Below are positions 2,799 through 16,319 of a stretch of 16,319 nt of DNA, piece by piece. The stretch comes from Vitrella brassicaformis CCMP3155 (taxonomy: Eukaryota; Protista; Chromerida). The stretch lies in assembly GCA_001179505.1 (NCBI GenBank), contig CDMY01000833.1, positions 1 through 16,319 on the forward strand. Reading direction: 5' to 3'. Both the position numbers and the translations under genes were made by a program. Each line of letters starts with the position of its first letter. Position 1 is the first letter of the stretch. A model generated the notes under the pieces. That model had not been told where the DNA came from, did not search any database, and was given only the letters and a program-made list of their open reading frames with translations.

Positions 2799-5700
2799 TC
2801 ATGACATCGATGCGTCTTGCGGCATATCTGCGTGTGCGTGAGTGTGGGTGTGCGAGGTGCCTGTCTTGCTGCGTGCATATGGACCGGACCAATGAGCGGA
2901 CAGAAGCAACCATAAACCTTTGCCTTCGATGCGTGTCCACTCAGACAACAAACACAAGGGTGAGCACGTCTCATCCGTCCACCCTCCCTCTCTCCCTCCC
3001 TCCCTCCCTCCCTCCCACGCATCGCATCACATCACACTCTCAGCCATGCTCCGGCGGCCTCCCAACATCCCCCCTCCGCCCATCAGGCACACTCACACCG
3101 TCACGCTGCACACCAGCACTAGCTGCTGCTGGTGGGGGAGGGGGCGGTGGTGGTGGTGGCGGCCTCACGCCCGCAGGCCCGTTCGCCAGAGGCCTGGCAT
3201 ACGCAGCAGGGGGCGAAGCCGCGTGATGCCGTGGCATGGTCGGCATGGGTGGAGGGGATGAGTGGGATGCGCCGGGGTCGCCCGACGACGACCGGAGTGG
3301 CGGGGTGCGTGATCTGGGGGGCCTGGGCGGGGCGTGGGTGTCGTTGGTGGACCCGGAACGGTTGAGGTTGGCTTGTGTGACGATGGTGTGCAGCACGGCG
3401 GCGTAGTACATCTCGATGTCTGCAATGCACGACTTCTGGGCCTGCGAGAGAGAGATACAGACAAGGCAGCAAGCTGTACCCGTCTGTTTGTGTGAATGTG
3501 TGCATGTGGCGTCTCTTCTGTCTGTGTCTCTTGATGGAGAGCGATGGCCGACCTTTCGCTGGTTCTCGACTTTGCTGATGAGTGCCACGTGCAGGCGGAC
3601 ACTGTACTCCTGATGCCGCTTGCAAAACGTCAGCAGCTCGTCACCCTGATGGAAACACACACACGCACGCACGCACACACACACACACACATGCACAACC
3701 AAATGCATGGTGTCACAGAACAGGCCTTCCCCACCTGCAGCTCATGTGCCTTGATATATGTGTCAAGGAAGTCCTTGGCCGGCATCGCCACGCGCCCATC
3801 GACCGGTGACGTCGATCCGAATCCGCCCATGCCCACGCCTACCCCGCCCCCACCACTACTGGTGTGTGTGGCCTGCCTGTGTACGTTGGTGAGGTGCTTC
3901 TCGAGATCTGCCTGGATGGCCATGAAGTCCTCCACCAGCTGAAAGAGGGCGGGGCCGGGCATCACCTCGCCGCCGAACCGGCGGATGCGCGCCACCACAT
4001 CGACACACCCCTGGGAGGAGTGGGTGGGAGACATGTACGTACATTTATGTGTGTGGTCTGGCGAGGGTTGTTGTGGTGGTCAATGGAGTTGCTCACCTTG
4101 ACGACGGTCTGTGCGATGTGCCACCATATCTTCGTCTGCACGCTCTTGGGCACACATCCGCCACCTGCGGGCCGGACAAGGGCAAGCCAACATATGTGTG
4201 GCTCAGTGTTCCTCGGTGTTGTGTTGTGTTGTGATGATGTCTGATGCGCTGCTGGTCTGACCGGCGACTTCGATGCGTCCCTCGAGGTCGTGCAGCTGGA
4301 TCTTGAGCTGGTCGATGGTCGACTTGGCCGGCGAGCCACGGGGGAAGTCCTACACACACATACAGAGCAGAAGAGAGAGATGTCAGCCACATGTGGCTGG
4401 GTGGTGGATGGGTCGGTGTGTCCTGTGGTCACCCGGTTGCTTACCTTTTGGTCCCACTTGGCGCTGCTCATGCCTGCGATGAAGGTCTCCAGCTGCAGCA
4501 GGTCGCTCGCCGCCCTGGTGTACACAAACCCACGCAGCTCATTCAGCACCTGAATGACCAACACGCCACACCAACCACACGGAGGGGAACAACACAAGAG
4601 TCTCCCGCACAGTGGATGGATCATCTCACATCATTTTGTCTCACCCGTGTCCGCTCCTGGAACGCCCTTGTGAAGGCCTCCTGTGTCTGTCGGTGGACCT
4701 CTGACAGGTACACTGGCCCGCCACCTCCCCCACCAGCACCACCTCCAGCAGCAGCGGCGGCCGCAGCCCTCATGCTGCTCGCATGTGCCACGTGGCTCAT
4801 GTCGGCGCCGACGAAGTACAGCCCCACATTTGAGAGCGGGGGTTTGTGGCGGATGTCGAAAAGGGCCGAGAGGAATGTGGCGGCGGACTCGACGCCAACG
4901 ACACGCTCGGCGAGGCCGTAGAGGGTGGTGTGGGAGGTGAGGGTCTCGTTGGTCAGCGGCGGCAGCAGCTCGGCCAGCGCTGACGGATGATGCACACAAA
5001 CATACAGATGGGAGGAATGATAGAGCCGTTCTCCTCTTTAAATCACCTCCCGTGGCTGCGTGTGAGGGGTTACGGGCGACAAACGCCCTGCAGACACACA
5101 CACAACACACAACACACAAAACACACAACACACACAACACACACAACACACACACACAGGACAAGAGCTTATTCGGCGACACACGAATGCGTGACGTGTT
5201 CACCTGACGCCCAGGAGGTGGTCTTTGAGTCGTCCGAACTGCCTCTGCAGCAGGAGTATGTCGTGCTTGTCGTGCAGCCGCGGCCCGCCCACGCAGTCCT
5301 CTGGCGGCATGGGCGACTCGAGCAGCTGCTCGAACTCGCGACCATGCACACACAGGGCCAACACGTTGTAGAAGAAGATATCCATCACCTGCGCACATCC
5401 AGCAGCACCTGACGTGACGCACAGCTCCCTCCCTCCCTCCCTCCCTCCCTCCCTCGGCCCCTTACGAGTGTGATGTTGTGGCAGATTTCAGGTGCCAGCG
5501 ATGGGAAGCAGATCATGATGGCCAGGTACTTCTCCACAGACTGCCCCAGGAACTGACTCGACGTCGACAGCACAGGGCCCAGGTTGGACCGCTCCAGCGG
5601 CAGCTCCGACCAATCCTGCCAGGGCGTCTCGTGCCCGCCGTCGATCCAGTGGCGGTAGAGGTCGAGGTCTCTGTCGGTGTCTGGCGCTGCTGATGGGTGG

Positions 5701-8700
5701 TGCCTGCTCACATCGGAATCGGTCTCGCTGCCCGCGAACCGACCACCTGCACAGATGGATGCGACAGACAGAGACGGTGGATGTGTGTGTGTGTGTGTGT
5801 GTCCGTGTGGTCGTTGCTGTCTGTCTACCGAATCTGTTGTCGGGCATTTTGTCGGGGTTCCAGTTGCGGAAAGGGTTTGAGTCGGCCAGACGCACATTGG
5901 GCGCCGGCCGGACTCTCGACCTGCCCGTGGTGGCTGGCGACCCTGCGGCCGTCGGTGAGCCATCGGGCGATGCGGCAGGCAGCTGGGTGGCTACACAGGC
6001 AAGGAAGGAAATGATACAAAAGGACGAGCTCCAAGGGAAGGGATCCTGTGTAGCTTGATTCACCCACCCACCGTAAGGGTCAAATAGCGGCGTGGACAGC
6101 GCCCAGCCCCTGAGCCCCTGGGGCAGCATCTGGTGGACCCTCTTGAGGTCGATGAGGCGGAAGTTCCGGGGGATGGGCAGCCGCTGCCAGGTGTCGTTCT
6201 GGATCATGATCTTGAGGTTCCTGCTCTCCTCGCCAGCCAGTGAGGCGAAGTACTCCATGCCCTTGGCCAGCATGCATTGACGCAGGTTGTGGGTCCAGGG
6301 GAGGGGCGGGGGGGAGGGCGAGGGAGAGGGGGAGGGAGAGCCGTCCCTCGTGTGGTGGATGGGGCTTGGTGCGGGTGAGGGGTGGTGTGATCGGGACCTG
6401 GGGGCCTGGAGGGGGCAGTCGGCCATGAAGGCGTCGGCCTCCTCGATGAACAGGTGCGCCAGCAGCAGCACCTGCAGCCATACACGCATCGCATACGGCA
6501 ATGGCGGGTGGTGATGGGAGAGAGGTGTGTTGGTGTTGGTGTTGGTGTCACCTGGAAGAAGGAGTCTTCTTTGAAGTTGATTGCGTTGGTGTTGACGTTC
6601 TGCATGGCCGTCATCACATTCTGCTGGATGCGCTCCCACACGCCTTAATCCATTGGCACACACACACACACAGAGAGAGAGAACTCACATGCCATGCCCC
6701 GTTCCTCTCCTCTCCCCTATGCCATCCATCTTTTCTTCTCACACGCACCTTTCTTGCCGGCGAGGAGTTCCTTGTGCACCTTGGCCACGAACTCGGCATA
6801 GACGTCCTCTTCGGGCTGGTACGGCAGGGGGAAGTTCAGGATGTCCTCAAAGCTGTTGGCCAGGTCGTCCTCTCCCCCACACGACGACCCCCGGCGCCCC
6901 TCCATCACAGCCAACACCGACCTAACCGTCGGCACCACCCCTTCGCTCTCCCTCCTCCCATCACCACCACCACTAGTACTAATGGTGCTCTTGCCCTCCT
7001 GCTGCCGACTCACGTGCCACATGGCAATGTACTGCAGCCGATAGAGTATGTCACACAGGTACTCCAGCATGTGTGCCAGGCAGGTGACGAGCCGGTCTGA
7101 TGGGATGCGGCTGCAGAGGTCCCGCAGGTGGGTGTGGCGACTGAGAGACGAGGGGGCGTGTGTGTGCGAGGGGGAGGGCGGGCGGAGGGGAGGCTCGTCT
7201 GCGGCTGTGGGTGTGATGAAGGACAGGACGCACTGGCGCATGACCTGGGTGGCGCAGTCGGCGAGGTGGCGGCACAGCTCCGCCCCGACAGACTCGGACT
7301 GAGGCAGCATGCAAAAAGCCTTCAAGACCTCCTCATACCTTCACACACACAGAGACAGGGAAAGACGGCATGGGCAAGTCGGGCGGGGGGGGGGGGGGGN
7401 NNNNNNNNNNNNNNNNNNNNNNNNNNNNNNNNNNNNNNNNNNNNNNNNNNNNNNNNNNNNNNNNNNNNNNNNNNNNNNNNNNNNNNNNNNNNNNNNNNNN
7501 NNNNNNNNNNNNNNNNNNNNNNNNNNNNNNNNNNNNNNNNNNNNNNNNNNNNNNNNNNNNNNNNNNNNNNNNNNNNNNNNNNNNNNNNNNNNNNNNNNNN
7601 NNNNNNNNNNNNNNNNNNNNNNNNNNNNNNNNNNNNNNNNNNNNNNNNNNNNNNNNNNNNNNNNNNNNNNNNNNNNNNNNNNNNNNNNNNNNNNNNNNNG
7701 GGGTGGATGGCATTGTTTAGTGTGTGGCTTACAGGTCGACATCGATTTTCTCGATGGACGAGGTCATTGCAATCGCCCGCAGACACTCATTCAGACGCTG
7801 CACACATAACACACACAGCACGGGCAATGAAGGCATACACGCGGCTGGTTTGCGCTGCTTACGATCCTCAGTGAGTTGACGTGTCCCTGCAGCCGCTGAT
7901 TCAGCCCCTTGAGCCCGGGGAACCGGGAGTACTGCGGGTCAGAACGGAGCGGAATCTGACACCAGGCACCGACACATCCATCCATCCATCCAGAGACAGA
8001 GAAATATGACTGACGGGAAGCTGAGCCCCGCCGTCCCCCGTCTGTTCTGTGTGCGGCTTGGCTTCCGCACCCACCTCACCTGGACTTGCATGAAGACGGC
8101 GATGGCCTTGCAGAATTGGCCGTTGAAGAGGAACTGCTGTCCGAGCATTTCGAGCGAGGTGAGCTTCTGGAACTCCTTGAGGATGTCGAGCAGCCCCTGG
8201 ATGCGCTGCCGCCTGTGCTGCTGGTTGACGATCGTCAGCGCCTCCTTGACCACATCGTCGTCCAACACCTGACATATACACAGACAGACAGACAGACACA
8301 CAGACAGACAGACAGACAGACGGGGGGGGTGGCAAACAAAGGATTCGTTCAGCTTTGCGTGTGCACCACACACACAGAGGGCGTGATCGGTTTTGCGAGT
8401 GACTGACCTTGAGTTTCCTCCTGCCGTTCTTGACGATGCTGCTGACGAGTGCCAGCTCGGTTTCGATCTCGTGCACCTGCTGGACGCCCCTGACGAACTC
8501 CTCGTAGTGGCTGAAGACCTGCTGAGCCAGCCGCGCATCGACCTCCTCCTGCAGACAGAAACACAGCCAAAACAACACAACAACAAGCACGGCAGTGCAG
8601 ATCAGATCACGCCAATCCATCCATCTCATCTCCCGCACTCCACTCAGCAGCTGCCATGCCAGCCGACCTGCACTCTTGTCAGATGCTCCACCCTGTTCTG

Positions 8701-8877
8701 CATGATCTGCAGGTTCCATGGCTTGGGCGCCGCCTCGATCTCCGCCTCGATGATGCCCTTGGCCTGATCCGCCTCGAAGAACACGGCGGGCAGCTCAGCC
8801 ATGAGGGCCTTCTCCGGCTTGCGGGATGGAGAGGGCGATGACGAGAGGGCTGGCGGACGAGGCGGGAAGCGGTCCAT
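2799..8877 (-). CDS. VPS50: VPS50 / syndetin (CCDC132), EARP complex subunit; about 19 exons, ~1280 aa; last exon uncertain
   Basis: Phase-consistent exons (-): 8877-8668, 8548-8408, 8268-8080, 7955-7863, 7797-7733, 7338-6749, 6643-6552, 6471-5829, 5746-5466, 5388-5204, 5087-5047, 4979-4645, 4549-4445, 4349-4262, 4164-4097, 4010-3735, 3645-3553, 3441-3114(?), 2827-2799(?). ATG is in GCCATGG context. Motifs in VPS50 order: VHEIETELALVSSIVKNGRRKLK (Vps54_N-type helix), EYFASLAGEESRNLKIMIQNDTWQRLPIPRNF, SVEKYLAIM, TLYGLAERVVGVES, AKWDQK, DFLDTYIKA, FCKRHQEYS (Syndetin_C). Confidence 0.9.
5094..5158. repeat. Compound (CA)n/(CAACA)n microsatellite in a VPS50 intron
   Basis: Direct reading of acacacacacaacacacaacacacaaaacacacaacacac... 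Confidence 0.9.
7400..7699. other. Assembly gap (300 N) inside a VPS50 intron, flanked by G runs
   Basis: N at 7400-7699, with a G run at 7385-7399 and gggg at 7700-7703. The flanking exons join in phase (..GAC CT|G TAT GAG.., reading IDVDLYEEVLKAF). Confidence 0.97.
8279..8321. repeat. (CAGA)n microsatellite in a VPS50 intron
   Basis: cagacagacagacagacacacagacagacagacagacagac. Confidence 0.9.
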
Positions 8878-9692: not shown

Positions 9693-11338
9693 TCAGCAGC
9701 ACCCCCCTGTGGGCTGCTGCACCGTTGGCTGGTTGGCGTTGAGCGTCAGGGTCTCGGGCAAATAACTGCCGACACGACATACAAACAAAACACCCACACA
9801 CACAGGTGTGAGCAATAACTACATACTGATGTAGTGTATGTATGGTTCCTTGCTTTCTTTGGTGTTGCTCACATCTGGTCGTCGGTGTGCTCCTGCTTGA
9901 GGGCCCGTCGGGCGATCTCCTGCAGCCAGAGACAGACAAACAACATGGTGGGTGGACATAACAGCATACAACCATACAACACATCCATCTCACACTGAAC
10001 TGATCGTTTGTCAAAAGTGCTTAGCTCACTTACCGTGAACGCGTCCTCTACGTTCTCGGCTGTCTTGGCGCTGACACACACACAACACACAACAAGACGC
10101 CACAAGGCGGGGCGACACAAGACGGGTGCAGTGCAGCCGGTCGACCCCTGGCGGCTCGCCTGTGGCTCCCTCCCTCCCTCCAATGTGCTCACTCACCTGG
10201 TCTCGAAGAAAGGAATGCTGCACTTGGTCTTGCACCAGGTGGACGCCCGCGCGTGACTCACCTACACACACACAGATACACAACACCCACCCACACACAC
10301 ACACACACCCCTACACCCACATCACATGTGCGCGTCTCTCTCTCTCTCTCTCTCTCTCTTCCTCCTTCCTCTCCTGTCCTGTCCTGTCCTGTCCTGTCCA
10401 GCCGTGCCGACCTTCCTCTGTCCCTCAGCGTCGAGCTTGTTGCCCAGCACCACAAAGGGAAAGTTGTCGGGGTCACGGGGACACGCCTGCCACAACACAA
10501 ACACACCAACACAATGAATCCGTCGTATGGTCTGTCTGTCTGCTCTTCTCCGTCAGTCAGGCTTGTATGGTATGTGCTTTGGTTGTGTGTTTGCCTTGCT
10601 TGCCTGTACGAGGAATTCTTCCCGCCACGAGTCGAGGTTTTCGAACGACTTAGGGTTGGTGAGGTCGAAGACCAGCACACAGCAGTCGGCGCCGCGGTAG
10701 AAGGCCACGCCCAACGACTGGAAACGCTCCTGACCTGCCGTGTCCCAGATCTGCAGACATACCCCATCACACCACAACACACCACACCACATCACAACCA
10801 CACACAGACATACTTACAGCATGTGTGTTATCAGAGTGATCTCTCTGCTCGTTGTCTCCTGGCTGTCATCAGTCAGTGAGTCACCTGCAGAGTCACGAGC
10901 TTGTCGTCAATCATGACCTCCTTGGTCAAGAAATCGGCACCAACTGGACCAACCACACACACACACACACACAAACGAGAACAGGCATGGCAGGCAAAAA
11001 GGAACAGATGTGGATCTCTCTAGCCTGATTGATTGCCATTTCCACGGGTCTCTCTCCTCTCTCCCCTCTCACTGACTTGTGGCCTTGTACTGGTTGGTGA
11101 ACTTCTTGTTGACGTACTGGTTCATCAGAGATGTCTTGCCCACTCTGACAGACAGACATCAGACGACACAAGACAAGACAACACAACACAACACAACACA
11201 GCACAGCACAACACAGCCATCAGATCTGCCCTGCCTGCAGCGGCTCTCCCTCTCTGCGTGTGTGTGGTCAGCTGGTGCTTCTCACCCTGAGTCGCCGAGG
11301 ATGATGACCTTTAGCAGCACCCTCTTGCGGCTCGCCAT
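9693..11338 (-). CDS. RAB7: Rab7 small GTPase, 9 exons, 207 aa
   Basis: Exons (-): 11338-11286, 11144-11077, 10943-10885, 10750-10604, 10486-10412, 10261-10197, 10070-10034, 9919-9873, 9765-9693, totalling 624 nt. The protein has [23 protein letters not shown] (P-loop), YKATIGADF (Rab7 effector loop), [48 protein letters not shown] and a C-terminal GGCC* prenylation motif. Confidence 0.98.
10335..10397. repeat. (TC)n plus (CCTGT)5 microsatellites in a Rab7 intron
   Basis: A tc run at 10335-10359 and cctgt x5 at 10373-10397. Confidence 0.9.
10487..10603 (-). other. Non-canonical GC-AG intron in Rab7
   Basis: Donor CAG|GCAAGC at 10604/10603 and acceptor TGGCAG|GCG at 10487/10486. Only this donor gives EFLVQACPRDP, colinear with the Rab7 motif EFLIQASPRDP. 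Confidence 0.85.
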
Positions 11339-11536
11339 GATGATTATCTGATCGATGCCCTACGTCGTCTGTCAGCGCAGATCTGCTTCTCCAGCTCTTT
11401 CTCGCGGGTGCGAGCTTGGCGACGAGTTGTGCTTGCCTCTGTTTTGCCTCTTGGTCGGTGGCTGGAGGCGCTATAGGTGCGCCTGCTTGCCCTCCCGCAG
11501 GCCCTTTGCCTGTTGACCCATTGGCCTCACCGCGGG
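11339..11536. promoter_or_regulatory. Putative bidirectional promoter and 5' UTRs between Rab7 (-) and the Tudor-AP2 gene (+)
   Basis: The divergent ATGs at 11338 (-) and 11537 (+) are 198 bp apart. The interval lacks the microsatellites seen in neighbouring introns. Promoter function is inferred from geometry only. Confidence 0.55.
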
Positions 11537-12611
11537 ATGGCGGCAGCCACGGATCCAGCCATGGACAGGACACGTGAGCGCAGGAAGAGGGAAGGCCAGG
11601 CAGGCGGAGAGTCACTGTCTGTGAGTTGAGGGCGCGTGGGCATCCATCCACGTGTGGAGGGTTGTGTTGCATGGTGCGTGTGTGGTGGTTGTGTTGTGAT
11701 GGATAGGTGTGACTCAGACGTGGCTGCCGCTGCTGGGCGTGTGTGTGTCGTCGGCTGATGGCGCGAGCACCTCTGTGATGCGGGAGTTCAAGCACGGCTG
11801 GAAACAGGTGCGCAAGGACAGGGTGTGAGAGAGATCTGTCTGTGCTCATGGGTCTGTCTGTGTGCTGCACGAGCCTCCTGGTGTGGTGTGTCTGTGGTGT
11901 GATTGTGTGTCATTCATGTGTCAGGGCCGTGTGGGTCTGTCTTCGCGTACCGGTTGTTACAGCATCTTCTACGGTGACGACGACGTCGAGATCGTCACAC
12001 CGCAGCAACTCCTGGCCATCATCCTACACTCATGCCGAAAGGGCAAAGCAGGTGAACACCAGCAGAGAGAGAGGTAGACAGAAGGAGAGAGAGGCGACCA
12101 AACCCTTACTGCTCCCCTTCTGCTGCAGCGGCAGAGCAGTATCTGTGGCCGCAGCCCCACGACGTCCCCCAGGCCGTTCCGCCCCCCTACCGCCACCACT
12201 TCGCCAACCCGCCCATAGACCCGCCACACACCAACTTCTCACGCGTCCCCCCCTCACAACGAGCTGCAGAGAACGCCACCGTCCTGGCACAGGGACTGCA
12301 CGACGGCCGTGCCGGTGTCACATGGGACATGCGCGATAGGTGCTTCAGGGTGGTGTTTGAGGCGGGGGCGGGCACGGCTGTGCGGGGGGTCAAGGAGTTT
12401 GAGGTGGATCGCTGTGGTGGGGTGGAGGCGGCCTTCTACGCCGCCAGGATCTTCGCCGGCAAGGTGGCGGCCGTCCCTGCTGCTGCTGCTGCTGCCGCTG
12501 CTGGGGTCAGAGTGGATCGTGAGAAGCTCATCGACTTCGACGAAAACACGGGTGCCAAAGACGGCCAGACAGACGAAGAAACACGCAGAGCTCACGGTGG
12601 TGCTGACACGT

Positions 12612-12642
<31 letters not shown>

Positions 12643-13965
12643 GTCACAGCTCAATACCAGCCCTGCCAGTGTGACGACCAAGGGAAGCCCATCGGTGCCG
12701 CCGACGAGCACCGGCACCCTTCCACCAGCAGCCACAACGACATCAGCAAGGACGACGAGGAGGCGCATCTGACGCGGGAGGCCGAGCAGATGCCGCGGAT
12801 AGTGGACATCTCCTGGCGCATTTGCAAGGGGCAGCACGTGTGGTACGCCGAGCACGGCACCCACTGCCGCATGTTCCTCCCTGACAAGTGCGGCGGGGTG
12901 GAGGCGGCCTTCCGCGAGGCACTCGACTGGAAGACCGCACAGGCCAGCGCCGAGGTAGCGAGGCGCAAGGAGGAGGCCGCCATCCTGCCCACCGCCACAA
13001 AACCAAAACTTCCCGACGAGATAAAATACGTCGACGGTGAGCGATTGACTGAGTGCGGAGACGCCCACACCTCTGATGGCCAGTCTGTCCTGTCTTGTGT
13101 GTGGATGGTGTGTGTGCCTCCACACAGAGTCGAGTCACCTCCAGTTCCCCGAGCCCGACGCAGCCATGGCCGTCGACACGCCGCCCGTCGACAAGGAGGA
13201 GGAGGAGGATGAAGAAGAGGATGCAGGTGACGGTGATGGGGACCACGACAACCATGACAACCACGATGCCGATCCCGATTGGGATGTAGGCATTAGAGTG
13301 CGCAGCAAGTCACAGCAGAGCGGCAGGAAATCAGGAGGGGGTAGCACTGGCGGGGGTGGCGGTGGCGGCGGAAGTGGTGGTGGTGGTCATGGGGGCGGCG
13401 GGTCGAGTCGCAAGAGCGGGCGCAAGACGGCCGTTGCGGACGGATACCTGACGCGGAAGCCTGGGGTGTTGATGTACAAGTTTGAGGCGGTGGTGGGCGG
13501 GCAGAGGATCGTCAGAAACATCGCATGCCTCGGCAGTGAGTGAGAGACAGACAACCAAAGAGACAAGAGAGCCGAGGGAGGAGACAAAGAAAGTTGCATC
13601 TCTCTCTCATGGGGTGTGTGTGTGTGTGTAGGTTTGACGTGGTACAACTTGTATCGGGCGCTCGTCATGTCGCTGGAGCACGAAGTCGAGGTACCGTACC
13701 CGCCAAACCACACCAGCCACAGCACACCACACCCGTCATGTTGTCGACACGTCAATCATATCATGTGTGTGTATGTGGGCCTGCCTTGTCTTGTCAGTAT
13801 TGGGTGAACGAGTCAACCGTCCCGCATCAGTGGGAGCTGCCCGACGGCACCATCCTCCCACACACAGACTTCGACTACAAAAACCAAAGCGGATCGAAAT
13901 GCCCCAGACCTGACTTCGACAAGGTAACCACACACACGACAGCACAGCACAGCACACCGAGAGAG

Positions 13966-13998
<33 letters not shown>

Positions 13999-15292
13999 TG
14001 CAGAGTCCGTCGTGGATCGGCACGCGCTTCCGTCTGGTGTACGGTGCGATGGCGTTCGACGTCAGTGTGGAGGACGTCATAGTCTACGAGCAGCGCATGG
14101 AGGACTGCGGCGCTGGCATGCTCAACCTTCACAAATGGGTTAGCGACGCGACACAGACACACAGACAGACAGACAGACAGACGCCTCGGTGCATGGGCGT
14201 GTGTGTTTGTGTGTGTGTGTTGTGCAGTTTCCTCGTTTGGTAGCTGAGGGCAGTGTGGGGGTGGCCCCTGTGCGTGGGGACGTCATGGACGAGGAGAGAC
14301 TCGCCATGTCCCACAACAGCGGCGGCAACTTACCACTGGACGTGCAGCGAATCAACAGGTAGACATGGAGGCGACCGACACAGGCAGGCAATCTGTCTGT
14401 TTGTTGTGTGGTGTGCCTGTCCTGTTTTTATGGTATGGTGCCACCGACCAGGACGATCCAGGCCCACTGGTGGAATAGCAACCTCTCCGCCAACCTGAAG
14501 CGCGGCAGAGCCCGCGACCTGCCCACTCTGCCTCGCACCACACAAGTAAGTACACACACACAGACACACAGACATGCACAAGCTCACTCACTGTCTCTCT
14601 CTCTGTCTCTCTACATGGATGCGATGCAGAGCCTCTCGAAGAAGGCCCGCGACCGCCTTGTCCGTTCCCTCTACCTGCTGCCGCCCAGCGACTTCATCAC
14701 CCAACTCGCACAGCTCGCCTCTTCACGCGCACCCCCCCGGAAACCCGACACACTCAACCGCCCCCTCCCGGCCCTCGACGAGGCGGCTGCTGGTGGGGGT
14801 GGTGGTGGCGAGGAGGAGCACGGTGGCGTGATGGGCAGCAGCAGCAGCGTGAAGCGTGGGCGGGGTGAGGCGGGTGTTAACGAGGGGGATGGGGATGGGG
14901 AGAGGGAGAAGGAGAGGGCCGTGAGGCACAAGCCCGACGACGCCACGCCGTGTGCAAGTAAGCAAGCCAGCGATTGATTCCAGGGCCGACAGTGCGGTGG
15001 TGTGTATCTATGGGATGTATGGGTCCCTGGTGGGGTCGGGTGCGGTGCAGGTGAGCTGACGACGCCCACGTTGCTGGAGAAGGCCGTCGGTGCAGAAGTA
15101 GCCAAGACTGCTGCCGGCGATGGACAGAAGAAGAGTACGCCACGGCACACACACATCCACAAACGATGCAGCAACTCTCGCAAATACTCTTCCTGTGTGT
15201 TGCGTATTGCCCCAGATTCGGCCGGTGACGCGTTGGTGCGACCCATGGCCATCGCACAGCAGGATGGTCGCGCACAGCTCAAGACCGCATAG
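11537..15292 (+). CDS. Multidomain ApiAP2-like protein (~853 aa): Tudor-like + 2 AP2-like + acidic/Gly-rich linker + pRiA4b-ORF3/MM3350-like domain
   Basis: Phase-consistent GT-AG exons: 11537-11573, 11707-11807, 11925-12051, 12129-12596, 12650-13036, 13128-13535, 13632-13690, 13798-13923, 14004-14138, 14228-14358, 14452-14545, 14630-14957, 15051-15134, 15216-15292, totalling 2562 nt and ending in TAG. All 13 junctions keep the frame open. The first exon and ATG are the least certain. Confidence 0.8.
11775..12026 (+). other. Tudor-like domain (PTM/DIR17-like), split by intron 11808-11924
   Basis: Spliced sequence VMREFKHGWKQGRVGLSSRTGCYSIFYGDDDVEIVTPQQLLAII fits the pattern V-x-x-x-F-x-x-G-W-x-x-G-x-V...Y-x-I-x-Y-x-D-x-D-x-E-x-x-T-x-x-x-L of PTM/DIR17-type Tudor domains (consensus from memory). 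Confidence 0.6.
12308..12463 (+). other. AP2-like DNA-binding domain 1
   Basis: RAGVTWDMRDRCFRVVFEAGAGTAVRGVKEFEVDRCGGVEAAFYAARIFAGK matches the ApiAP2 layout: GV-x-W/F-D, a three-stranded sheet, F-x-V-x-x-x-G, then an 'EAA...A' helix. Confidence 0.7.
12615..12642. repeat. (TG)14 making up about half of a 53-nt intron
   Basis: The TG run lies inside intron 12597-12649, ending 4 nt before the acceptor CAG. Confidence 0.9.
12781..12942 (+). other. AP2-like domain 2 (more divergent)
   Basis: AEQMPRIVDISWRICKGQHVWYAEHGTHCRMFLPDKCGGVEAAFREALDWKTAQ has a P-x-I/V lead-in, W..W strands, F-x-x-x-K-x-G and a helix ending in 'ALDWK', as in ApiAP2 domains. Confidence 0.6.
13466..14460 (+). other. pRiA4b ORF-3 / IS1096 TnpR (MM3350-like) domain spread over 6 exons
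   Basis: Spliced: YKFEAVVGGQRIVRNIACLGSLTWYNLYRALVMSLEHEVEYWVNESTVPHQWELPDG...GTRFRLVYGAMAFDVSVEDV...FPRLVAEGSVGVAP...PLDVQRINRTI. Motif order parallels the family consensus (YqLkv..iwRrlevp..TL.dLH.aI..a.gW...Hl.eF...G.kf.Y.YDfGd.W.h.ieve...yP.c..G...cPPED...fd.e.in.rl). Judged by eye. Confidence 0.5.
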
Positions 15293-16128
15293 ATACCCAC
15301 ACACAGATAGATAGGAAAGGTGGATCGCGTAGCTTGCCCAGCCCAGCCTGGCCAGCCGGAGTTGGCTTGGCTTTGCAGGGAGGGAGTGGAGGGGAGGGGA
15401 GGTGTGTTGATAGGATAGCTGTGATGGAGGGATGAGATGATCCGATGACCGAGTTGCTGATATGTGTGTGCACACGAACGGTTGCGTGGATGGCCGATCC
15501 ACGTGTGTGTATGTGCATGTATGTGTGTAGGGAGTCTAGGGAGGAGAGAAGAACGACAGGGGGGCGGGGCTGGGCTGGTGTGTGTGTGTAGGGGCAGGAA
15601 AGGTCTGTACAGACAGAGATTGGCTGGCAATGACTCGCTGCCGAGCTGCAGAATGGACAGAACTGATGGGGGTTCTAGAAAGGGCACCCACGGCTGTGCT
15701 GCCTGCCTGCCTGCCGATTAGTGCTGTTGCTTGGTGCGGTGCATGCCTGCATCCATGAGTTATGATGTATGTGTTGGATGGGTTGAGACCATCGCACTAA
15801 ACAGCATCCATCCATCCATCCACATGTCTATACACATCCACACGGATCGATCCCCCGTCCCATCGGTCCACCCCACCCAGCGGACTCAGTCAGAAATGTC
15901 GGTCGGGCGCAGCAATATGAGAGCATGTCCATCCATCCGTCACATTCATCTCATCTGCTGCCTCGTCCACCGGCTCTCGCTGCGAAAAGACGCACGCCAC
16001 TCTCAGACGGCACGCACACAAGAACACGCACCCATCGATCGCGTCACACCAGTGGTGGGCACCACTGAAAGCCAGATCAGTGGAATAGCTCGTGCTGCTC
16101 TTGCTCTTCATTTGTCTGCCCGCTCTCT

Positions 16129-16215
16129 GGAATCATCAGACGCCTCACGCACAGGGTCTCTCCGCGAGAGTCGCCACTCTCGCGGAGAGAGCCTCAGCGC
16201 AAGGATGATGATTCC
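16129..16215. repeat. 87-nt nested fold-back: 15-bp perfect core stem, 4-nt loop and 10-bp outer stem
   Basis: tctctccgcgagagt (16157-16171) pairs with actctcgcggagaga (16176-16190). ggaatcatca (16129-16138) pairs with tgatgattcc (16206-16215). Three 3-bp segments pair in register between them. Confidence 0.9.
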
Positions 16216-16319
16216 TCGGAACGGACACACAACCACAAACATCAGGTCACCTCAGCTCATCCCCCTCGTCTGTCTGCCTCTCCTCCCTCCCTGATCAGCT
16301 TCACCGCCTCCCGCCACAT

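What the first reader, a model, noticed from the sequence alone, without database searches (positions are those of the whole stretch)
11537..15292. Apparently unusual architecture: Tudor + AP2 + AP2 + pRiA4b-ORF3/MM3350-like domain in one protein
Seen: a 14-exon frame that is fully phase-consistent (~853 aa). Known: ApiAP2 proteins are the main transcription factors of apicomplexans and chromerids, usually with only AP2 +/- ACDC or AT-hook domains, and Tudor folds often read methylated histones. Inference: this protein could join a histone-mark reader, tandem DNA-binding domains and a prokaryote-type domain, forming a chromatin-sensing regulator. I do not know of this combination being described, but I could not search to confirm that.
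Basis: partly seen in the sequence, partly recalled or inferred. Interest (0 to 1): 0.85.

Follow-up and report, generated by a model that had tools for sequence, protein, structure and literature searches.

The report
Vitrella AP2-like protein with MM3350 domain
A real, spliced gene of the alga Vitrella brassicaformis, a free-living relative of malaria parasites, joins a bacterial-type domain of unknown function (confirmed) to two very divergent probable AP2 DNA-binding modules and an unproven Tudor-like barrel; the mix is unusual but found only in this species.

Summary
The gene is real. Spliced RNA contigs give 13 GT..AG introns, 14 coding exons, a CDS at 11537-15292 and 838 aa. The public Vitrella brassicaformis model is the same protein read from the second Met (830 aa).

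The four domain calls fare differently:
- **Two AP2 modules: plausible only.** They resemble each other, and the ESM Atlas model of the first matches AP2 clusters (TM 0.68-0.76). Pfam, PHROGs, NCBIfam, PDB sequence searches and a 1.84-billion-protein phmmer scan give no AP2 link.
- **Tudor: not shown.** The only hits are weak matches to SH3 domains (E 0.1-0.3), which suggests at most an SH3-like barrel.

No orthologue was found anywhere, so the architecture appears specific to Vitrella. It was probably assembled by duplication of a multi-exon segment, because the paralogue shares intron positions. The scan has already noted other pRiA4b genes and many AP2-plus-chromatin fusions in this genome. 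Interest is moderate: a new variant of the ApiAP2-type factor.

The parts
11406..11573 (+). Exon 1: 5'UTR from at least 11406; first ATG at 11537 (public model starts at the second ATG, 11561)
   Evidence: RNA contig record 22 of run X7 starts at 11406; joint 11573->11707 GT..AG; translation; no ATG between 11406 and 11536, and an in-frame stop lies upstream
11707..12051 (+).
   Evidence: Joints; Pfam, PHROGs and NCBIfam silent; only weak PDB hits to sorbin/ponsin SH3 domains, E 0.1-0.3
12129..12551 (+). Exon 4: Pro-rich linker and AP2-like module 1 (about 12299-12463)
   Evidence: ESM Atlas structure TM 0.76/0.72/0.70/0.68 to AP2-annotated clusters; only a self hit in 1.84 billion representatives; Pfam silent
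12650..13036 (+). Exon 5: acidic linker and AP2-like module 2 (about 12790-12951)
   Evidence: Internal repeat with module 1, BLASTP E 8e-6, shared motif D+CGGVEAAF; second matched stretch; strand-strand-helix in the low-confidence AF2 model
13128..13535 (+). Exon 6: acidic tract (13157-13276, net charge -18), Gly/Arg/Lys-rich tract (13277-13444), start of the MM3350 domain (from about 13454)
   Evidence: Translation and composition
13454..14458 (+). MM3350 / pRiA4b-ORF3-like domain, spread over exons 6-11 (exons 13632-13690, 13798-13923, 14004-14138, 14228-14358, 14452-14545)
14459..14737 (+). Basic helical extension after the domain, conserved with paralogue P0002 (exons 11-12; intron 14546-14629)
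   Evidence: 75% identity continues to P0001 residue 704; helices in the AF2 models
14630..15292 (+). Exons 12 (14630-14957), 13 (15051-15134) and 14 (coding part 15216-15292): low-complexity C-terminal tail and stop codon
   Evidence: Joints 14957->15051 and 15134->15216; translation
15293..16319 (+). Long 3'UTR; RNA contig record 23 runs past 15900
   Evidence: Record 23 of X7, 4082 nt, colinear from 15216 to 15900 and beyond

Best explanation
This is an expressed, 14-exon, lineage-specific gene of Vitrella brassicaformis. It encodes an 838-aa modular protein with these parts in order: a small N-terminal beta-barrel-like region, two divergent AP2-like modules, a strongly acidic tract, a Gly/Arg/Lys-rich linker, a bona fide MM3350/pRiA4b-ORF3 domain with a basic helical extension, and a low-complexity tail. 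The most likely role is a nuclear DNA- or chromatin-associated regulator of the ApiAP2 type. In that role the AP2-like pair would supply DNA targeting. The MM3350 domain would act as a partner- or ligand-binding module attached to a DNA-binding domain, as in bacterial proteins that fuse pRiA4b-ORF3 to LexA- or DtxR-type winged-helix domains. Shown here: the gene structure, splicing and expression, the MM3350 fold, the internal AP2-like repeat, and the paralogy with P0002. Inferred: the AP2 fold and DNA binding, nuclear location, any histone reading, and the role of the MM3350 domain. The architecture probably arose within the Vitrella lineage by duplication or shuffling of a multi-exon MM3350 segment shared with P0002.
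For: Spliced RNA contigs and a continuous ORF; identity to the public model. MM3350 fold. Paralogue P0002 is 75% identical over 251 aligned columns (P0001 residues 460-704), and its first copy has a Pfam PF07929 hit (29.7 bits, cut-off 26.6). Five of the six P0001 introns in this region are shared with P0002. AP2-like: internal repeat; Atlas structural matches to AP2 clusters, including an apicomplexan AP2+ACDC cluster. Bacterial pRiA4b-ORF3 clusters fused to LexA_DNA_bind/Fe_dep_repress (row 5). Acidic and basic tracts typical of nuclear regulators. Chromerids carry many apiAP2 genes in paralogous, lineage-specific clusters (PMC4501334).
Against: No profile library recognises any domain in P0001 itself. 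PDB sequence searches find no AP2 or Tudor chains. Atlas feature scores of 0.84 or below count only as leads by the tool's own calibration, and TM scores on 60-residue stretches are weak evidence. Each AP2-like module has a net charge of only +1, lower than I would expect for a DNA-binding AP2. No orthologue was found, so no conservation argument is available. The single-sequence AF2 model was useless for the N-terminal half (pLDDT 37). The function of MM3350 domains is unknown in any organism.
Confidence: 0.5

Rival explanations
1. The protein is an MM3350/pRiA4b-ORF3 family protein whose N-terminal half is fast-evolving orphan sequence. On this reading the 'AP2' and 'Tudor' resemblances are superficial, and the protein is not a DNA-binding transcription factor.
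For: All HMM libraries and PDB sequence searches are silent for residues 1-350. Only a self hit in 1.84 billion proteins. Near-neutral charge of the AP2-like modules. Atlas scores in the 'lead only' range.
Against: The two modules are a genuine internal repeat with an AP2-like strand/helix pattern. Four of the six best Atlas structural rows for module 1 are AP2-annotated clusters. ApiAP2 domains are known to be very divergent and lineage-specific in chromerids (PMC4501334).
Confidence: 0.3
2. The gene belongs to a mobile-element-derived family. On this reading pRiA4b-ORF3 domains came from a bacterial mobile element, were amplified in Vitrella, and act in transposon or genome-defence biology rather than in ordinary gene regulation.
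For: In prokaryotes the family is linked to plasmids and insertion sequences ('TnpR protein' naming; PMC3942029 listed). Vitrella has several such genes, one reportedly tandemly amplified in a repeat unit (scan notes s1-201840 and s1-209536; unverified). P0002 carries three copies.
Against: This locus has 13 ordinary spliceosomal introns, sits between housekeeping genes (Arf GTPase, Vps54/syndetin), is single-copy at the DNA level apart from the diverged paralogue (68-82% nt identity), and is steadily expressed. No transposase or terminal repeats were seen.
Confidence: 0.15
3. The single ORF is an artefact that fuses two neighbouring genes.
For: Two RNA contigs (records 22 and 23 of X7) cover the gene rather than one, overlapping by only 30 nt at 12220-12249. 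Depth is about 13 on the 5' contig and about 44 on the 3' contig.
Against: The overlap lies inside exon 4, with no stop codon or splice site there. A 30-nt overlap is what a k=31 assembly graph break would produce (my inference; the k value is not stated in the tool output). The frame is continuous across all 14 exons. The independent public model is identical.
Confidence: 0.04

Closest known systems
ApiAP2 transcription factors of apicomplexans and chromerids (Pfam PF00847 AP2; solved example: the P. falciparum PF14_0633 AP2 domain, cited from my own knowledge)
   Same: Myzozoan host; one or more roughly 55-residue modules with a GV.W ... F ... helix pattern; long low-complexity linkers; lineage-specific with no orthologues, as described for most chromerid apiAP2 genes (PMC4501334); Atlas structural match to an apicomplexan AP2+ACDC cluster.
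   Different: Pfam AP2 does not match; net charge is only +1 per module; it carries an MM3350 domain and an N-terminal barrel-like region instead of ACDC or AT-hooks; DNA binding is untested.
MM3350 of Methanosarcina mazei (PDB 2I1S) / plasmid pRiA4b ORF-3 family (Pfam PF07929, IS1096 'TnpR')
   Different: About 13-17% identity; below the Pfam threshold in this protein; eukaryotic, split by five introns; embedded in an 838-aa multi-module protein; followed by a basic helical extension shared only with P0002.
Bacterial wHTH-pRiA4b_ORF3 fusions (LexA_DNA_bind / Fe_dep_repress + PF07929 clusters)
   Same: A DNA-binding domain joined to a pRiA4b-ORF3 domain in one polypeptide (structure row 5).
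   Different: The DNA-binding module is a winged helix rather than AP2; these are short prokaryotic proteins; their function is also uncharacterised.
Vitrella paralogue P0002 (1377 aa, contig CDMY01000793.1)
   Same: Middle MM3350 copy 75% identical over 251 aligned columns (245 residues of P0001), including the extension; five shared intron positions.
   Different: Three MM3350 copies and, by eye only, a chromodomain-like motif near residues 1020-1070. No AP2-like modules and no similarity in the N-terminal half.
SNAPC3 core of the human snRNA-activating complex (7XUR, 7ZWC, 9FSO)

Membership tests
pRiA4b ORF-3 / MM3350-like (PF07929) | Fold match to the solved MM3350 structure 2I1S | tested here: met
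   [not shown]
pRiA4b ORF-3 / MM3350-like (PF07929) | Pfam PF07929 HMM above the gathering score | tested here: not met
   No hit for P0001 at E<=10. It is met by copy 1 of paralogue P0002 (29.7 bits against 26.6), which aligns with the P0001 domain.
pRiA4b ORF-3 / MM3350-like (PF07929) | Nearest neighbours in structure space belong to the family | tested here: met
   Of the top 30 AFDB clusters, 18 are named pRiA4b ORF-3 family and one 'TnpR protein'; the rest are unnamed or 'uncharacterized' (one of them labelled DUF1841), none named for another fold; E down to 1.3e-6. Atlas TM 0.54-0.61.
ApiAP2 / AP2 DNA-binding domain (PF00847) | Pfam AP2 HMM match | tested here: not met
   No hit at E<=10 for the whole protein or for isolated modules. 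No AP2 chain in PDB sequence or profile searches.
ApiAP2 / AP2 DNA-binding domain (PF00847) | Three-stranded sheet packed on a C-terminal helix (AP2 fold) | tested here: inconclusive
   The ESM Atlas model of residues 135-200 gives TM 0.68-0.76 to AP2-annotated clusters. The AF2 single-sequence model is too poor to use.
ApiAP2 / AP2 DNA-binding domain (PF00847) | Sequence-specific DNA binding | not testable with these tools
   Needs PBM, DAP-seq or EMSA. Net charge of +1 per module is a caution.
Tudor / royal-family methyl-lysine or methyl-arginine readers | Tudor (or Agenet/chromo/PWWP/MBT) profile match | tested here: not met
   Pfam, PHROGs and NCBIfam silent for residues 1-90.
Tudor / royal-family methyl-lysine or methyl-arginine readers | SH3-like five-stranded barrel | tested here: inconclusive
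   The only PDB hits are sorbin/ponsin SH3 domains, E 0.1-0.3, over 32-38 residues. No usable model.
Tudor / royal-family methyl-lysine or methyl-arginine readers | Aromatic cage that binds methylated residues | not testable with these tools
   Aromatic residues (F, W, Y, F, Y) are present in the stretch, but their geometry is unknown without a reliable model.

The most novel reading that the evidence does not exclude
The MM3350/pRiA4b-ORF3 domain, an uncharacterised module of prokaryotic plasmids and insertion sequences, was taken up by the Vitrella lineage, acquired introns, multiplied, and was recombined by exon-segment duplication with DNA-binding (AP2-like) and chromatin-reader-like modules. 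That would make it a working part of eukaryotic nuclear regulators. Its second-best structural neighbour, the DNA-contacting core of SNAPC3, could then reflect a real relationship and give this family its first functional handle: a DNA- or partner-binding scaffold in transcription complexes.
Probability: 0.15. Interest if true: 0.7.

Novelty: new variant of a known kind. Interest (0 to 1): 0.42.

Why it matters
Chromerids are the free-living reference point for how the ApiAP2 regulatory system of malaria and Toxoplasma parasites arose. If the AP2-like modules bind DNA, this protein would add an accessory domain of prokaryotic origin to the short list of known ApiAP2 partners (ACDC, AT-hook). 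It would be a eukaryotic parallel to the bacterial fusions of winged-helix domains with pRiA4b-ORF3. It also offers a tractable entry point for a widespread domain whose structure has been known since 2006 but whose function has never been assigned. The value is limited because the gene is an orphan of one species and two of its four claimed domains are not verified.

Tried and rejected
- Pfam on exon pieces, the whole protein and isolated domains found nothing at E<=10. PHROGs and NCBIfam also found nothing.
- phmmer of exon 4 against 1.84 billion representatives returned only the protein itself.
- A word-indexed search with residues 1-350 returned only the protein itself.
- The same search with the four-copy MM3350 alignment gave no hit.
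- Two metagenome scans, with P0001 and with alignment A3, found no relatives.
- AF2 on the full-length single sequence gave pLDDT 37 and was unusable.
- PDB sequence searches gave only Gly-linker artefacts for the whole protein. There were no AP2 chains for the repeat profile or for either module, and no chromodomain for the P0002 motif.
- tblastn of AP2-like module 1 against phages gave no match.
- The very high RNA and DNA depth at 15698-15715 and 15805-15822 looked like a dispersed repeat. It is only (CTGC)n and (CATC)n microsatellites.
Full report
**Source and context.** The window is the whole 16,319-bp contig CDMY01000833.1 of Vitrella brassicaformis CCMP3155 (GCA_001179505.1). Upstream on the minus strand lie an Arf-family GTPase gene (about 9693-11338) and a Vps54/syndetin-like gene (about 3040-8877). 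The Arf gene is head-to-head with the gene studied here. An RNA joint with CT..AC ends at 11144/11286 belongs to it.

**Gene model.**
- I laid contigs of four public runs on 10900-15900.
- Runs X3 and X6 carry the unspliced sequence, so they are DNA. X7, and partly X1, carry spliced forms, so they are RNA.
- Two more joints follow from consecutive contig pieces: 12551/12650 and 14545/14630.
- Three more (13535/13632, 13923/14004, 14138/14228) fit the only GT..AG pairs that keep the frame. Together they account exactly for the 543 nt of contig record 23 between its mapped pieces.
- The spliced mRNA has one long ORF from 11537 to 15292: 838 aa in 14 coding exons, with introns of 77-133 nt.
- No ATG precedes 11537 in the transcript, and an in-frame stop lies upstream.
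- The public protein P0001 (830 aa) is identical from residue 9 onward.
- The two RNA contigs overlap by 30 nt inside exon 4, which I read as an assembly-graph break. A depth step from about 13 to about 44 leaves room for an additional internal-start isoform.

**C-terminal domain (confirmed).**
- Pfam does not recognise it in P0001.
- The only relative found is the Vitrella paralogue P0002 (1377 aa). It is 75% identical to P0001 residues 460-704.
- P0002 holds two further diverged copies. The first of them passes Pfam PF07929, and the four copies align with conserved R, H, D, G, W-PR and IN positions.
- A profile of the four copies finds a single PDB sequence, 2I1S (MM3350), at E 0.77, through the family's N-terminal motif.
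- AF2 on that alignment gave a usable model (pLDDT 67.5, pTM 0.72).
- Of the 30 best AlphaFold DB clusters, 18 are named pRiA4b ORF-3 family and one 'TnpR protein'; the others are unnamed or uncharacterised, and none is named for a different fold. The ESM Atlas agrees.

**AP2-like modules (plausible, not proven).**
- Residues 138-192 and 269-322 of P0001 are an internal repeat (BLASTP E 8e-6; shared D+CGGVEAAF). By eye both follow the AP2 strand-strand-strand-helix pattern.
- The ESM Atlas model of residues 135-200 matches AP2-annotated clusters at TM 0.68-0.76. These include a phage HNH+AP2 cluster and an apicomplexan AP2+ACDC cluster. The feature search also returns AP2 clusters at 0.84.
- Against this, Pfam AP2 is silent. 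So are PHROGs and NCBIfam, PDB sequence and profile searches and phage tblastn.
- phmmer of exon 4 against 1.84 billion proteins finds only the protein itself.
- Net charge is +1 per module.
- Given how divergent chromerid apiAP2 domains are (PMC4501334), I put the AP2 fold at roughly 75% and DNA binding lower.

**N-terminal region ('Tudor', not shown).** No profile hit was found. The only PDB matches are sorbin/ponsin SH3 domains at E 0.1-0.3 over 32-38 residues. An SH3-like barrel, the fold class that includes Tudor, is possible.

**Origin.**
- Within the MM3350 segment, five of the six P0001 introns sit at the same places in P0002. One of these has its donor shifted by 12 nt (KW|FPRL against KWVGRS|FPRL).
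- Each gene also has one private intron.
- Nucleotide identity is 68-82%, and blastn alignments run through introns.
- The segment was therefore copied as genomic DNA, not as cDNA.
- No relative outside Vitrella was found in any search.

**Place in the scan.** Earlier unverified notes report the same domain at 13466-14460 of this window (s1-227039) and the P0002 gene with three pRiA4b domains plus a chromodomain (s1-242734, which has the same 5974-nt length as the gene in L001). They also report two further pRiA4b genes, and many AP2-plus-chromatin-domain fusions in this genome. So this gene is one instance of a broader Vitrella habit of recombining AP2-like modules with other domains. That lowers its singularity but fits the reading.

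**Verdict.** This is a real gene with one confirmed unusual domain, two plausible AP2 modules and an unverified Tudor. It is most likely a lineage-specific ApiAP2-type nuclear factor with a prokaryote-derived accessory domain (confidence about 0.5). I found no description of the combination in the papers searched.

Noticed in passing
window 9693-11338 (- strand) and 11338-11406: An Arf-family small GTPase gene lies head-to-head with the studied gene. The gap to the first RNA-supported base (11406) is under 100 nt, which suggests a shared bidirectional promoter. A CT..AC RNA joint at 11144/11286 is one of its introns.
   Followed up: partly
window 3040-8877 (- strand): A Vps54_N / Syndetin_C gene (1271 aa) is called here. 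The AT-richer stretch at about 7000-8500 (GC 0.43-0.46) falls inside it.
   Followed up: no
window 12605-12642, 13612-13629, 13981-14000, 14195-14222: Several introns of the gene carry (GT)n/(TG)n microsatellites just upstream of the acceptor. Others carry CA/GACA-rich tracts after the donor.
   Followed up: no
window 15698-15715 and 15805-15822: (CTGC)n and (CATC)n microsatellites in the 3'UTR attract hundreds of unrelated contigs. They cause depths of 250-1100 and many loose ends. This is not a dispersed element.
   Followed up: yes
window 14139-14144; L001 5615: Intron 9 uses a weak GTTAGC donor. In paralogue P0002 the equivalent donor lies 12 nt further on, adding VGRS. Each paralogue also has one private intron 19 codons away from the other's (after PHT in P0002, after DFDK in P0001), which could be intron sliding or independent gain and loss.
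   Followed up: partly
window 12220-12249: The two RNA contigs of run X7 meet here inside exon 4, with a depth step from about 13 to about 44. This may be 5' coverage bias, or an internal transcription start giving an isoform without the N-terminal barrel.
   Followed up: no
L001 about 7106-7500 (P0002 residues about 1020-1070): P0002 has a chromodomain-like motif by eye (LLDSKWNGRRYLYLVKKRFKEPVWEP). Neither Pfam nor PDB sequence search recognises it. Scan note s1-242734 makes the same unverified call.
   Followed up: partly
[not shown]
   Followed up: partly
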